Positions 3,189 through 11,269 of a stretch of 64,000 nt of DNA are shown in pieces. Numbering within the stretch: position 1 is the first letter of the stretch; every line of letters begins with the position of its first letter. The stretch covers positions 10,230,001 to 10,294,000 of the forward strand of contig NC_135263.1 in the NCBI RefSeq assembly GCF_964204865.1, read 5' to 3'. The notes below the pieces were generated by a model, which was given only the letters and a program-made list of their open reading frames with translations, searched no databases and was not told where the DNA came from. This stretch comes from Styela clava (Eukaryota). A program made the position numbers and the translations under genes.

Positions 3189-3391
3189 CCGTAAAACCTC
3201 TATTTCACCGCCATATCGCTCTATTTCACCGCCATATCGCTCTATTTTTCAACTCTTCCCCAATAGTGGTGTTCTATCAGAGGCGACGTTCAATTAGAGG
3301 GTGGCGCTCTATTTTTCAACTCTTCCCCGATAGTCAGACAGTGGTACCATGGTGTTCTATTACAGGTGGCGCTCAAATACAGGTTTTACGG
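3189..3391. mobile_element. Tc1/mariner-pogo-type MITE
   Basis: TIRs CCGTAAAACCTCTATTT / AAATACAGGTTTTACGG, flanked by TA on both sides, with internal short repeats (ctctatttcaccgcc). Confidence 0.75.
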
Positions 3392-3732
3392 TATTTGCCG
3401 TTTCCCGATACGCACCATTCTGCAATTTGAACAGTGATTTCTCGGGCCAGAAGTTATCGTGTTATTGCTTTTTTGACACAGATACGGTACAGATGTAAGC
3501 TATGGTACGGTACCGTAAGTTCACTAGTCTAACCTTTAATTGCACAGGCGTTAAACATTTGTGACCTCACGGTACCTACTTCTGTACTTTGCCATCCTGC
3601 CATCGGAAATATCCAGATATATTTTCTATTTCAGTATTTGATAGATCAGGAAACAGGGAAATAATGAAATAAAATATATTTAGCTTTGATGTTCAGATGT
3701 TAGAATAATTAGGTCTGAAGCATTTTGCACAG

Positions 3733-5520
3733 ATGGACGAGAATAACTTGGACTTGCTTTGTGCTATAGAAGTTGATGATGGATTGGAAGGACGATTGAA
3801 AGATCGGGGAATTTCAAGGAGAAATGTACGCAGCATAATTCATGAGCTGTTCACCAATGAAAGCGTTTTAAAGTTATTAGAAACGGAAGACGCAGAACCT
3901 GAACTGGATTTTACAGATGCTCCAGTCACAAGGTCGAAAAGGCCACGAACCGAGTTTAATGACGAATTCAAATATTTGGATTTGAGCACCGGTAGTGTCG
4001 AATTTCACAAACTCAATAATGACAATGAAATAAACCAAAATGAGAATTCTCTCGTTTGTTGCAATGATGACACCTTTGATTCAACTCGTGATATCCATAT
4101 TGAAGGTTATGATGATGATGGGAAGTTTAACTGGCAGACGTGGTTGACAGGGCTTGAAAATACTGAAAAGGATACTGCTGAAAAACGGGATGAATATGAT
4201 TCCGAAGAAGATCCAGACTTCAATTTCTTGGCGGAAGCAGAGGAATTTGATGTTGAAGATTTTAGGGATGACTGTGTTACAAGAATATCTAAACGAGAGC
4301 TAAGGAGTCTAAACCTGCGGAAACGGTCAACTGCGAGAAAGAAGAATACTGCTTCTAATGAAAATTCGACTGGAAATGAGATTTCTTCAACGGACAAAAT
4401 TTGTAGTCTAAATATTGATGATTATAAAAAATGTAAAACTGTGCGTGAGAAGTTGATGATATTGCGATGTAATCCAAAGTTGAAAAGCTCTATTATTACA
4501 ACAAGATCCAAGCGTGTAAAAGCACAAAAAAGAGACTTGAGTTTCACTATACAGCAAAAAGAAAACCTTTTGCAGCAAATGCAACAACATGTACAGCTTC
4601 TTACTCAAGTTTGTTTATTGGAGCAATATAGCATTGAAACTTTTTATAAATCACGAATGCTATTGTATGAAATTGATTATTTTCGCCAGAATAGTTTCGA
4701 CTCTCAAAAGACTCAATTCAATATACCTTGTCTGTCCGATGCACTAAGCATTGTTCAGCAAATATCTTCATCTACAAAGCTTACTACTTGCAAAGATAAT
4801 TTTGACAGAGAAATGAAAATCATTGCTAACAGTAATGTTTTCATGTATAAAGAGTTACTTCCAGTCATTGTAGGTGATAAACAATTACATAATGGAAAAA
4901 GGCCTTTTTCATTTCATGAGGATTGTTTAATCGCTCGTGGAATACATGAAATGTCTGGGAATTTTATTCTTACTACTTCAGAACTTATCTCACGATTTAT
5001 GCTTCCATGTCGTACAAGTAAAGAAATAAAAGCACATATCAACTATTTCAGTTCAATTCGAAGTGTTAAAAACGCTACAAACCCTATTGTGCAATATAAA
5101 GCATTTAAAGTGCTTCCCGAACCCGCTGACACAATCATTCCAGTACTGCCTTACGACGCTAAATCACCAATGCAAATGGATGGAGACCTTCCTGAATGGC
5201 TGACTTCACTTCAGCAGGGTTCATCTTCTCAAATTTTTGAAAACGGTAGTTACGAATTGGATGTGAATTCCACTGAGACTGAAATTGTTAATCAATTAAT
5301 TACACACAATTTTAAGAGAATAAAACCTGTGAAAGTGTCAAAAAATTGGACTAGAAAATTGGATGAATTGATTCTTACGACTTGTAAATGTCATGATGGT
5401 GCAACAAAAGGAGCATTAGATATTCTTGCACGTGATATCCCAACCAAGACAAAGAGTCAAATTAGGAGACGGTTTTACAAATTGTTATCAATATTTCATA
5501 AGTCCGTGGTCAAATCGTAA
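3733..5520 (+). CDS. GON4L: GON-4-like protein (GON4L/YARP family), compact 595 aa, single-exon CDS
   Basis: Conserved blocks RRNVRSIIHELFTNE, acidic EEDPDFNFL...VTRISKRE, FTIQQKENLLQQMQQHVQLLTQ and FSFHEDCLIARG, plus a C-terminal SANT/Myb-like WTRKLDELIL...QIRRRFYKLL. The acceptor ttttgcacag abuts the ATG. Confidence 0.8.
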   Translation: MDENNLDLLCAIEVDDGLEGRLKDRGISRRNVRSIIHELFTNESVLKLLETEDAEPELDFTDAPVTRSKRPRTEFNDEFKYLDLSTGSVEFHKLNNDNEINQNENSLVCCNDDTFDSTRDIHIEGYDDDGKFNWQTWLTGLENTEKDTAEKRDEYDSEEDPDFNFLAEAEEFDVEDFRDDCVTRISKRELRSLNLRKRSTARKKNTASNENSTGNEISSTDKICSLNIDDYKKCKTVREKLMILRCNPKLKSSIITTRSKRVKAQKRDLSFTIQQKENLLQQMQQHVQLLTQVCLLEQYSIETFYKSRMLLYEIDYFRQNSFDSQKTQFNIPCLSDALSIVQQISSSTKLTTCKDNFDREMKIIANSNVFMYKELLPVIVGDKQLHNGKRPFSFHEDCLIARGIHEMSGNFILTTSELISRFMLPCRTSKEIKAHINYFSSIRSVKNATNPIVQYKAFKVLPEPADTIIPVLPYDAKSPMQMDGDLPEWLTSLQQGSSSQIFENGSYELDVNSTETEIVNQLITHNFKRIKPVKVSKNWTRKLDELILTTCKCHDGATKGALDILARDIPTKTKSQIRRRFYKLLSIFHKSVVKS

Positions 5521-5659
5521 AATCTTTCTAATTTGATCCTTTTTATTTTCGTTTTTCAATTCTTTATGATTTAACACTGTGCATTATCGATGTAATAGTC
5601 ACTTATTTATTGGGTGGATACTTTGTGATTTATGTTGAAAAATGTATTTTACAGCTCCT

Positions 5660-6571
5660 ATGCTAGCTATTTGGCAACGTTTTAGAATGGCAAAATTTTA
5701 TGCCGTTTTTCGAGGCCGTAAAGCAGGTGTATACACAACATGGAACGATTGCAAAAAACAAGTTGATGGCTTTAAAGGGTGTATCTACAAAAGTTTTGCT
5801 GGAGAATCTGAAGCTAAGATATTCGCTAAAACTGGAGAAGTTGGATTAGCTGTAAATAAATTAGACAAGCCTTCCAGCTCCAACGTGTCTACAGCTGCTT
5901 GCTCGATAGACTCGAAAATATTGATGGATATTTTTGGAGATCCAAACGATGATGTATATTCCGATGAAGAAGGGCTTACTGTAAAATCAAAATCGGCCAA
6001 AAAAAGGAAATTGGATAGTTCAAAGAAAACCAAACAAGCCAAAGTTTTGAAAATAGATACAGGCTTAACATGCCATGGCTCTAACAAAAAAATTATCAAT
6101 GATATGGCATTCAGCGTTGATGAAAAGTCAAACCCTGTTGTGTACACTGATGGTGCATGTTCCAATAATGGTAAAAAGAAGGCTGTCAGAGCTGGGTATG
6201 GCGTGTGGTGGGGTGAAAATCACCCTCTGAACATTAGTGCCCGGTTGGAGGGAGTACAGACAAATCAAAGGGCAGAAATAGCTGCAGCCAATGCCTGTAT
6301 AAAACAGGCTGTCGATAAAGGACTCAAATCCATAACCATAAGAACTGATTCTATGTTTATAATTAATTGTATAACAAAATGGGTACCTGGTTGGTTAAAG
6401 AAGAAGTGGATCAAAAGTGATGGTAAGCCTGTTGTGCATAAACCGGAATTTATGACAATGCTAACAAATTTGAAAAATGTAGATGTGAAATGGGAGCATG
6501 TTAGAGGACATCAAGGTATCTATGGCAATGAAATGGCAGACAGATTAGCTGTCAGGGGTGCCACAATGTAA
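5660..6571 (+). CDS. RNASEH1: Ribonuclease H1 (hybrid-binding domain + RNase H catalytic domain), single-exon CDS; alternative ATGs at 5660 and 5687
   Basis: N-terminal HBD FYAVFRGRKAGVYTTWNDCKKQVDGFKGCIYKSF. Catalytic motifs VYTDGACSNNG, QTNQRAEI, IRTDS and HVRGHQGIYGNEMADRLA. The ORF-track start at 5642 overlaps the acceptor tattttacag and is probably not used. Confidence 0.95.
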   Translation: MLAIWQRFRMAKFYAVFRGRKAGVYTTWNDCKKQVDGFKGCIYKSFAGESEAKIFAKTGEVGLAVNKLDKPSSSNVSTAACSIDSKILMDIFGDPNDDVYSDEEGLTVKSKSAKKRKLDSSKKTKQAKVLKIDTGLTCHGSNKKIINDMAFSVDEKSNPVVYTDGACSNNGKKKAVRAGYGVWWGENHPLNISARLEGVQTNQRAEIAAANACIKQAVDKGLKSITIRTDSMFIINCITKWVPGWLKKKWIKSDGKPVVHKPEFMTMLTNLKNVDVKWEHVRGHQGIYGNEMADRLAVRGATM

Positions 6572-7269
6572 TTGGTGTCCTATTTGATTCCAACAATTAA
6601 AAAAAAAGCCTTTTGTCATGTTCGCAAATATAAGGTTATTTTCACAGCCCAATGTGTTTTCTTCATTTGGAGACCTCTATCAAAATAAATGAACAAATTC
6701 TCTACATCTCCATTTTGTTGGCCTTAATATTATGATTTTACCAATCAATCATTAATGTAAGGATAGGGGAGTCGATTCATAATATACCCAAGTTTGCATA
6801 TAAATCTAATTTTCATACGTACTGTTAAAATAGTATTCAATCTGACCTTTACACTAAAACAGTTTTGAGATAAGGAAATCCATTCTAAGGAGGAGGATGC
6901 TGATATGAACTATATGCTGACCAACGTTCAATCATGTTTCAATATTACAATTTCAATAATTTCGTGTAGATATATTTTTTTAGTTTCGTTCAAATGCAAC
7001 TTTCTTATGATTATGACTTTTTTTCCTATTCTTTATTTCATTAAATGATGACAACTGCATTGCCAGGGAATTAGGGAGTATTTCTTGTTTTCAAAACCAG
7101 GTATCCAGTGTTGAGAGGAAATCACAAAGTACCTTATTGATGTCAAAGTAAATGTTGTGATTACGGTAATTAAAATTAGGTTGCTTCTAGGAATACCGTT
7201 TTTCACAGAGGGAGAAGTTTTAAGTGCGACAATCTTGTACTGGTACGCGTTTGCTCTCATCTCCTAAAA

Positions 7270-7530
7270 CTACCCAAATAATGGGCTGGGTCTAAGCGTT
7301 GTCTGATTTTCAGGGAATGGATTCTCCCGTAGATTACTTGACTATCTGTTGAGTTTACGGTCTTCATAGCCGCAACACGTACCAGACCATACATAAGTGG
7401 GAAATTGCTATCCCAAATGACCCACAAACAATGCCTATTGTCAATGTGACATTCACCCTTATTCAACTTTTACTTCTGCATGGAAGTTCGGGAGACACTG
7501 CTTGTCCAAACAGTGCGACAGGCAGCTTTA
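7270..7530 (-). mobile_element. Possible highly decayed BEL/Pao integrase C-terminal remnant
   Basis: The minus-strand translation GLVRVAAMKTVNST resembles the DGLVRxVxVKT motif of BEL/Pao pol ends. The rest is degenerate. Confidence 0.25.
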
Positions 7531-7609
7531 GTATCACATGGTTTCCCTACGGTTAGTTTCAATTTTTCCGCATGAACTTAAATACCGGTACACAACAAAA
7601 CAAAGAAGC

Positions 7610-8815: not shown

Positions 8816-11269
<2,454 letters not shown>

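What the first reader, a model, noticed from the sequence alone, without database searches (positions are those of the whole stretch)
5642..5690. Two tandem splice acceptors could switch RNase H1 between mitochondrial and nuclear isoforms
Seen: the acceptor tattttacAG (5653-54) lies 5 nt before an ATG at 5660 that adds the short peptide MLAIWQRFR (Arg-containing, no acidic residues). A second acceptor, cgttttAG (5684-85), lies 1 nt before the in-frame ATG at 5687 (MAKFYAV, start of the hybrid-binding domain). Established: mammalian RNase H1 makes mitochondrial and nuclear forms from two in-frame AUGs by leaky scanning, and alternative SL trans-splicing produces dual targeting in trypanosomes. 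Inference: this animal may choose the isoform by alternative SL acceptor use in the downstream gene of an operon.
Basis: partly seen in the sequence, partly recalled or inferred. Interest (0 to 1): 0.8.

Follow-up and report, generated by a model that had tools for sequence, protein, structure and literature searches.

The report
Sea-squirt RNase H1 with two start codons
This is the only intact RNase H1 gene of the sea squirt Styela clava, with the two in-frame start codons that flies and mammals use to make mitochondrial and nuclear forms. RNA data point to one leader-splice site upstream of both starts, so leaky ribosome scanning is a more likely switch than a choice between two splice sites.

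Summary
AG 5653-54 lies 5 nt before ATG 5660 (MLAIWQRFR), and AG 5684-85 lies 1 nt before in-frame ATG 5687 (MAKFYAV, start of the hybrid-binding domain).

A third in-frame ATG sits at 5642, upstream of the first AG. Another pyrimidine-preceded AG sits at 5665-66.

The genome is Styela clava, an ascidian. The gene is intronless and is the only intact HBD+RNase H copy in the assembly.

RNA-like contigs from three studies cover only the two genes. In the deepest run, the contigs of both the upstream gene and RNase H1 begin exactly at an acceptor AG (3633 and 5653), each with 4 foreign letters. That fits spliced-leader addition at 3635 and 5655. Another run bridges the two genes, as an operon precursor would. 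No contig shows a joint at 5686, though contigs cannot exclude a minor form.

ATG 5660 has a weak context (C at -3, C at +4). ATG 5687 has a strong one (A at -3, G at +4). A first Met, a short basic extension and a second Met just before the HBD recur in other tunicates, insects and mammals.

Best reading: one trans-spliced mRNA with two starts used by leaky scanning. Alternative acceptor choice is unsupported. This is a new member of a known kind.

The scan also noted the operon on this same window (s1-820014).

The parts
3633..3634 (+). Acceptor AG of the upstream gene, preceded by atatattttctatttc. Probable spliced-leader addition site (mRNA body starts at 3635).
   Evidence: The X9 contig rec20 has its mRNA-sense 5' aligned end at exactly 3633, with 4 unaligned letters. 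Sequence read.
3733..5520 (+). Upstream cistron: intronless 595-aa ORF with a C-terminal Myb/SANT-like domain (GON4L-like).
   Evidence: ORF. Pfam Myb_DNA-binding_7, E=5e-9. Covered by RNA contigs in X1, X5 and X9.
5521..5654 (+). 3' UTR of the upstream gene plus a short intercistronic/outron stretch. It contains no AATAAA.
   Evidence: Upstream contigs end at 5568 (X5), at 5611 plus 3 letters (X9), or run on to 5634/5665 (X1). Poly(A)-signal scan.
5642..5644 (+). In-frame ATG upstream of acceptor 1 (A at -3). Present only in RNA that is not trans-spliced. It is the start of NCBI's 309-aa model.
   Evidence: The X5 contig starts at 5603 and the X1 bubble spans 5605-5665, so such RNA exists.
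5645..5654 (+). Acceptor 1, tattttacAG. Probable spliced-leader trans-splice site (mRNA body starts at 5655).
   Evidence: The X9 contig rec21 starts its alignment at 5653 with 4 foreign letters, the same pattern as at the upstream gene's acceptor.
5660..5686 (+). First AUG of the trans-spliced mRNA plus the 9-codon extension MLAIWQRFR. Weak Kozak context (C at -3, C at +4). Candidate mitochondrial-form start.
   Evidence: No ATG lies between 5663 and 5686.
5679..5685 (+). No RNA evidence of use.
   Evidence: Y10=6; a rival AG at 5665-66 has Y10=8. No joint or loose end here.
5687..5689 (+). Second in-frame AUG, two codons before the FYAV motif of the HBD. Strong Kozak context (A at -3, G at +4). 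Candidate nuclear-form start.
   Evidence: A conserved Met at this position is seen in alignment A1 and.
5693..5824 (+). Hybrid-binding domain (RNase H1 N-terminal domain).
   Evidence: Pfam PF01693, E=3e-19, aa 18-61 of the 309-aa form.
5993..6043 (+). Basic cluster SAKKRKLDSSKKTKQAK in the linker. NLS-like; function inferred.
   Evidence: In Drosophila, deleting the putative NLS gives purely mitochondrial protein (PMC6433063).
6137..6562 (+). RNase H catalytic domain with intact catalytic motifs (YTDG, RAEI, RTDS, NEMAD).
   Evidence: Pfam PF00075, E=2e-37. Alignment A1. Motif positions.
6569..6987 (+). Stop codon and 3' UTR. AATAAA at 6684-89. RNA cover ends near 6730 (X5) or at 6953-6987 (X9, X1).

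Best explanation
This is the single intact RNase H1 gene of Styela clava. It is the downstream cistron of a two-gene, intron-free, spliced-leader-resolved operon (GON4L-like gene, then RNase H1). Its mature mRNA gets its 5' end by leader addition at the first unpaired acceptor (AG 5653-54). That removes the upstream ATGs at 5632 and 5642 and leaves a very short leader (SL + CUCCU).

On this one mRNA, ribosomes meet a weak-context AUG (5660) and, 27 nt later and in frame, a strong-context AUG (5687). Leaky scanning then yields two proteins. The long form carries the basic, acid-free extension MLAIWQRFR ahead of the basic start of the HBD and is the candidate mitochondrial form. The short form starts at the HBD and uses the KKRK-type linker signal for the nucleus.

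Shown: gene identity, coordinates, contexts, conservation of the two-Met layout, transcription, and contig ends at the acceptor AGs. Inferred: that the 4 foreign letters are leader sequence, that both AUGs are used, and where each form goes.
For: Gene identity:
- HBD plus RNase H with intact catalytic motifs.
- The best named relatives are ascidian RNase H1 proteins.
- The only other HBD+RNase H copy has lost catalytic residues.

RNA:
- Three RNA-like runs cover only 3633-6987, whereas the DNA-like run covers everything.
- In the deepest run (X9), both genes' contigs start exactly on an AG preceded by a pyrimidine tract (3633 and 5653). Each carries 4 unaligned letters. This is what a leader ending in AG would give. 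The Ciona leader ends ...AAG (PMC1488885).
- X1 contigs bridge 5605-5665 at a lower depth than the RNase H1 body, as precursors would.
- Ciona operons are rich in single-exon genes and place the downstream acceptor at or near the upstream mRNA end (PMC1488885 and PMC2760879).
- Trans-splicing prefers the first functional acceptor (PMC11155486).

Translation:
- Contexts are C/C at 5660 and A/G at 5687, with no ATG between them.
- The two-Met layout is seen in Ciona, Phallusia, Clavelina, a hemichordate and mammals.
- In Drosophila, M1 and M16 (a 15-aa extension) decide mitochondria versus nucleus (PMC6433063).
Against: - The leader itself was not seen. Only 4 unaligned letters are reported, and their identity was not shown.
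- I could not find the S. clava SL RNA gene.
- Contigs in X1 and X5 run through 5654 without a break, so RNA that is not trans-spliced exists. Its share is unknown.
- The upstream mRNA end in X9 (5611) is 43 nt before the acceptor, not abutting it as in typical Ciona operons.
- A 9-aa extension is short for a presequence, and its crude amphipathicity score is modest.
- No targeting predictor was available.
- A separate HBD-less RNase H paralog with a presequence-like N-terminus exists on another chromosome. It could serve mitochondria instead.
Confidence: 0.5

Rival explanations
1. The leader is added alternatively at 5655 or at 5686. The second site deletes AUG 5660, so acceptor choice sets the ratio of mitochondrial to nuclear enzyme.
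For: Both AGs exist with T-rich tracts. Ciona genes are reported to have multiple trans-splice acceptor sites (PMC11155486). Alternative trans-splicing does give dual targeting of IleRS in Trypanosoma brucei (PMC3273800). Contig data cannot exclude a minor junction.
Against: No joint, contig end or loose end at 5685/5686 in any of three RNA studies; the only clean 5' end is at 5653. The AG is built from coding codons. It is no better than the AG at 5665-66. Leaky scanning already explains two products. The two-Met layout is conserved in animals that do not trans-splice, so the layout does not call for a splicing switch.
Confidence: 0.08
2. There is no dual targeting from this gene. One start is functionally relevant and the enzyme is nuclear. 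Mitochondria are served by the HBD-less RNase H paralog on contig C19, whose N-terminal ~52 residues are basic, Ser/Leu-rich and free of acidic residues.
For: The paralog ORF of 242 aa has an RNase_H domain only. It belongs to a family conserved in seven transcript-derived proteins at 34-52% alignment identity, all with presequence-like N-termini. The window gene's extension is only 9 aa with modest amphipathicity.
Against: In every member of that paralog family the fourth catalytic Asp is replaced by His and the conserved His is missing, so activity is uncertain. The second Met directly before the HBD and a basic extension are kept in many tunicates. That conservation is hard to explain if the extension has no role.
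Confidence: 0.22
3. The main mature mRNA is not trans-spliced. It starts near 5600 from its own promoter, and translation begins at ATG 5642. This gives the 309-aa protein of the public annotation, with a 15-aa extension (the same length as in Drosophila).
For: The X5 contig starts at 5603 with no foreign letters, and X1 covers 5605-5665. ATG 5642 has A at -3 and is in frame. The public annotation calls the 309-aa form.
Against: An out-of-frame ATG at 5632 precedes ATG 5642. The region 5521-5654 is also the 3' UTR of the upstream gene, so cover there need not belong to RNase H1 mRNA. In the deepest run there is no cover at 5612-5652, and the contig starts at the AG. Assemblers clip short leader tips when the precursor path is present, so contigs running through 5654 are expected even if most mRNA is trans-spliced (inference).
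Confidence: 0.12

Closest known systems
Mammalian and Drosophila RNase H1 (RNASEH1 / rnh1): dual mitochondrial and nuclear targeting by alternative translation starts
   Same: HBD-linker-RNase H architecture. A first Met, a short basic extension and a second Met directly before the HBD. Basic NLS-like cluster in the linker. Weak-then-strong start arrangement (contexts shown here only for S. clava). Drosophila uses M1/M16, a 15-aa extension (PMC6433063).
   Different: The extension is only 9 aa on the trans-spliced mRNA (15 aa from ATG 5642). The gene is intronless and appears to be the downstream cistron of an operon. The mammalian regulatory uORF (own knowledge; not read here) has no counterpart on the trans-spliced mRNA, because splicing at 5655 removes the ATGs at 5632 and 5642.
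Ciona SL-resolved operons (Satou et al. 2006, 2008)
   Same: Same-strand neighbours. Single-exon genes, including the 5'-most gene. An unpaired acceptor just upstream of the downstream ORF. Dicistronic RNA detectable. The upstream 3' UTR lacks AATAAA.
   Different: In the deepest run the upstream mRNA end (about 5611) is some 43 nt before the acceptor rather than directly abutting it. The S. clava leader sequence was not recovered here.
Trypanosoma brucei isoleucyl-tRNA synthetase: dual targeting by alternative trans-splicing (PMC3273800)
   Same: A first AUG that adds a presequence could in principle be removed by a downstream leader-addition site.
   Different: Use of the second site has no RNA support here. 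The conserved two-AUG design works without splicing choice in other animals.

Membership tests
Eukaryotic RNase H1 | N-terminal hybrid-binding domain (PF01693) | tested here: met
   E=3.2e-19, aa 18-61.
Eukaryotic RNase H1 | C-terminal RNase H domain with intact D-E-D-D catalytic residues | tested here: met
   PF00075, E=1.8e-37. YTDG, RAEI, RTDS and NEMAD align with human and tunicate enzymes.
Eukaryotic RNase H1 | Two in-frame AUGs flanking a short N-terminal presequence | tested here: met
   ATG 5660 and ATG 5687. The same layout is found in 69 of 107 homologues with the HBD motif.
Eukaryotic RNase H1 | The long form is imported into mitochondria and the short form is nuclear | not testable with these tools
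   No targeting predictor or experiment was available. Only crude charge and hydrophobic-moment figures were computed.
SL-resolved operon (Ciona type) | Same-strand genes with under 100 nt between the upstream mRNA end and the downstream acceptor | tested here: met
   X9 contig ends at 5611 and 5653; X1 cover is continuous.
SL-resolved operon (Ciona type) | The downstream cistron carries the spliced leader at an unpaired acceptor | tested here: inconclusive
   The contig starts on AG 5653 with 4 foreign letters, and the same is seen at AG 3633 of the upstream gene. The letters were not shown and the species' leader was not identified.
SL-resolved operon (Ciona type) | Dicistronic precursor RNA | tested here: met
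   X1 contigs 3712-5634, 5605-5665 and 5636-6581 overlap across the junction. A contig path is not proof of a single molecule.
SL-resolved operon (Ciona type) | No intercistronic DNA (the upstream poly(A) site abuts the acceptor AG) | tested here: inconclusive
   Upstream contig ends vary: 5568, 5611, or reading through. No poly(A) reads were available.
Dual targeting by alternative trans-splicing (T. brucei IleRS type) | Two leader-addition sites used, one on each side of the first AUG | tested here: inconclusive
   Only the upstream site has support. Nothing is seen at 5686, but contigs can hide minor forms.

The most novel reading that the evidence does not exclude
In a chordate, the ratio of mitochondrial to nuclear RNase H1 is tuned at the RNA level. 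Splicing could go to 5655, to 5667/5686 (removing AUG 5660), or not happen at all (keeping AUG 5642). The three routes would give three different N-termini, layered on top of leaky scanning.
Probability: 0.08. Interest if true: 0.6.

Novelty: new member of a known kind. Interest (0 to 1): 0.3.

Why it matters
If the best reading holds, the two-AUG dual-targeting design of RNase H1 extends to tunicates. It would also show the design surviving in a gene that has lost its introns and moved into a trans-spliced operon. There, trans-splicing removes the upstream ATGs and creates the short leader that favours leaky scanning. That is a tidy, testable example rather than a new principle.

Tried and rejected
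1. Finding the S. clava spliced-leader gene by similarity to the Ciona leader (sequence confirmed in PMC1488885).
   - The 18-mer with up to 2 mismatches hit a large array on G000:C3. This proved to be tRNA genes with an upstream ATTTGCAT octamer and no GT donor.
   - The single-copy near-matches share no flanks.
   - The 3' 12-mer plus GT is not enriched.
   - The 5' 12-mer is about 3x enriched, but its copies have unrelated flanks.

3. Literature on S. clava trans-splicing: nothing relevant is held. Matsumoto et al. 2010 is not held.

4. Ciona NCBI isoforms X1 and X2 differ by one internal residue, not at the N-terminus. They give no hint of alternative 5' ends.

5. Only one read-laying run was allowed, and all runs were contigs. 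Junction counts, strand and exact ends could therefore not be measured.

Full report
**Observation.**
- tattttacAG ends at 5653-54, five bases before ATG 5660, which opens MLAIWQRFR.
- cgttttAG ends at 5684-85, one base before the in-frame ATG 5687, which opens MAKFYAV.
- The ORF runs without introns to the stop at 6569-6571.

Three things were missed.
- A third in-frame ATG lies at 5642, right after an in-frame TGA, giving MYFTAPMLAIWQRFRM... It is upstream of the first AG, so it survives only in RNA that is not trans-spliced.
- An out-of-frame ATG lies at 5632.
- A further AG at 5665-66 has a better pyrimidine tract than either named acceptor.

AGs with modest pyrimidine tracts occur at 5597, 5653, 5665, 5684 and 5713. 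The 'second acceptor' is the codons TTT-AGA, so by sequence alone it is not more than chance.

**What the gene is.** Pfam finds the RNase H1 hybrid-binding domain (aa 18-61, E=3e-19) and the RNase H domain (aa 166-307, E=2e-37). The best named relatives are RNase H1 proteins of ascidians: Styela clava, Clavelina, Ciona and Phallusia. The window's contig has the same length (20,054,287) as the contig of a named Styela clava protein, so the genome is Styela clava.

The assembly holds three further RNase H-type loci.
- A 52%-identical intronless copy on the same chromosome (L002) keeps the HBD. Its catalytic motifs are changed (YTDG to YIYG, RTDS to RTNS, NEMAD to YKMAK).
- An HBD-less copy lies on C19 (L003; see 'A complication' below).
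- A fragment with stop codons (L004).

The window gene is therefore the only intact HBD+RNase H enzyme.

The upstream gene (3733-5520, 595 aa) is also intronless and has a C-terminal Myb_DNA-binding_7 domain.

**RNA evidence.** Only one search for runs and one laying of reads were allowed, and every run was held as contigs.
- X10 covers the whole 3300-7600 stretch with no differences, so it is DNA-like. It is probably the assembly's own sample.
- X1, X5 and X9 come from three studies. They cover only about 3633-6987 and nothing on either side, so they behave as RNA.

The deepest run (X9) gives two contigs.
- One spans 3633-5611. It has 4 unaligned letters at its mRNA-sense 5' end and 3 at its 3' end.
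- The other spans 5653-6953, again with 4 unaligned letters at its 5' end.

Position 3633-34 is an AG preceded by atatattttctatttc. Two independent contigs thus start exactly on an acceptor AG, each with the same number of foreign letters. A spliced leader ending in AG would give this pattern, because its last two letters align to the genomic AG. The Ciona leader ends ...AAG (PMC1488885). 5' exons generally end in AG (splice-site consensus, own knowledge). A cis-spliced upstream exon would be expected to extend the contig by far more than 4 letters (inference).

In X1, the contigs 3712-5634, 5605-5665 (a two-allele bubble, summed depth about 6.8) and 5636-6581 (depth 16.8) overlap. RNA crossing the intergenic stretch therefore exists, at lower depth than the RNase H1 body. 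In X5 the RNase H1 contig starts at 5603.

I read these as precursor RNA, as the upstream gene's 3' UTR, or both. Assemblers clip short tips such as a 16-nt leader whenever the precursor path is covered (inference), so these contigs do not argue against trans-splicing. No run shows a joint, contig end or loose end at 5685/5686. Contigs drop rare variants, so this is absence of support, not proof of absence.

**Fit to known tunicate biology.**
- About a fifth of Ciona genes lie in SL-resolved operons.
- 38% of Ciona operon genes, and 60% of 5'-most operon genes, are single-exon.
- The downstream acceptor normally abuts the upstream mRNA end (PMC1488885 and PMC2760879).
- Trans-splicing prefers the first functional acceptor, although genes have several minor sites (PMC11155486).

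The pair here matches this picture. One difference is that the upstream end seen in X9 (5611) lies about 43 nt before the acceptor.

**How two isoforms could arise.** After leader addition at 5655, the first AUG (5660) has C at -3 and C at +4 and sits only 5 nt after the leader. The next AUG (5687) is in frame, has A at -3 and G at +4, and no other ATG lies between them. This is the classic layout for leaky scanning.

The protein layout is conserved: a first Met, a short basic or hydrophobic extension, then a second Met one to three residues before the FYAV motif of the HBD.
- Ciona intestinalis: MLRCCIRTAIMKSFYAV.
- C. savignyi: MFRLVAGRMKFYAV.
- Phallusia: MYRLGMVSFYAV.
- It is also seen in Clavelina, several unnamed tunicate-like transcripts, a hemichordate, insects and mammals.
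- Overall it appears in 69 of 107 homologues with the motif.

In Drosophila, M1V gives purely nuclear enzyme and M16V gives mainly mitochondrial enzyme. That paper states the same principle for mammals (PMC6433063). A 15-aa extension is therefore enough there.

In S. clava, the first 29 residues from Met 5660 have no acidic residue, and the first 30 carry a net charge of +5. The linker has a KKRK-type basic cluster. Targeting itself could not be tested here.

**A complication.** The C19 locus encodes a 242-aa protein with an RNase H domain only. Its N-terminal ~52 residues are basic, Ser/Leu-rich and free of acidic residues. Related proteins occur in seven transcript assemblies, six at 49-52% identity and one at 34% in alignment A2. 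All have presequence-like N-termini. All keep D-E-D but carry His in place of the fourth catalytic Asp. This could be a dedicated mitochondrial enzyme, which would remove the need for dual targeting of the window gene. I rank this as the main rival.

**Verdict.** The operon and trans-splicing part of the interpretation has indirect RNA support at the first acceptor. The two-isoform idea is plausible by conservation. The specific mechanism, isoform choice by two acceptors, has no support and is not needed.

I file this as a new member of a known kind: RNase H1 with alternative translation starts, here inside a tunicate operon. Interest is modest.

**Limits.**
- The species' leader was not recovered.
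- Raw reads were not available.
- Earlier notes of this scan on the same window call the pair a candidate operon (s1-820014). Other notes report SL RNA gene arrays elsewhere in this genome (s1-817479, s1-822871). I used them as leads only.

Noticed in passing
L002 1501-2337 (-) = G000:C18:8391310-8392146: Intronless paralog (XP_039265781.1, 279 aa, 52% identical in the genome search). It keeps the HBD and the RNase H fold but has lost catalytic residues (YIYG, RTNS, YKMAK). It has a single ATG 9 nt after a ctttaaAG acceptor-like site and no N-terminal extension. Probably a dead enzyme or a hybrid-binding protein.
   Followed up: partly
L003 1492-2217 (-) = G000:C19, around 15860200-15860676: HBD-less RNase H1-like gene (242 aa) with a presequence-like N-terminus. 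Its family is conserved in seven transcript assemblies (P0126-P0132). The fourth catalytic Asp is replaced by His in all members. Possible dedicated mitochondrial RNase H of stolidobranch ascidians.
   Followed up: partly
G000:C3:24847563-24961794 (-); sample in L015: An array of about 115 kb holding some 80 or more tRNA genes, with spacings of roughly 0.5 to 1.9 kb. Each gene is preceded by ATTCTATTTGCATAAG, which contains the octamer ATTTGCAT and matches 15 of the 16 bases of the Ciona spliced leader. No GT donor follows, so these are not leader genes.
   Followed up: partly
window 3633-3732: The upstream gene also has two acceptor-like AGs: 3633-34 (used, judging by the X9 contig) and 3731-32, directly before its ATG 3733. 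A tiny uORF (ATG 3665) lies between them. Tandem AGs before a start codon are therefore not special to RNase H1.
   Followed up: partly
window 6689-6690: Polymorphic 8-nt insertion (TGTGCTCC) directly after the AATAAA at 6684-89 in the RNase H1 3' UTR. It is present in X9 and in one allele of X1. RNA cover ends near 6730 in X5 but at 6953-6987 in X1 and X9, suggesting two poly(A) sites.
   Followed up: no
proteins P0002 (538 aa) and P0003 (484 aa): Transcript-derived relatives from unnamed ENA samples carry two or three RNase H domains in tandem (P0003 also has an HBD). The first domain of P0002 is 63% identical to the window protein. Either real multi-domain RNase H proteins or mis-assemblies.
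   Followed up: no
window 8816-11227 (-): Intronless p97/VCP-type AAA ATPase (803 aa), convergent with RNase H1.
   Followed up: no
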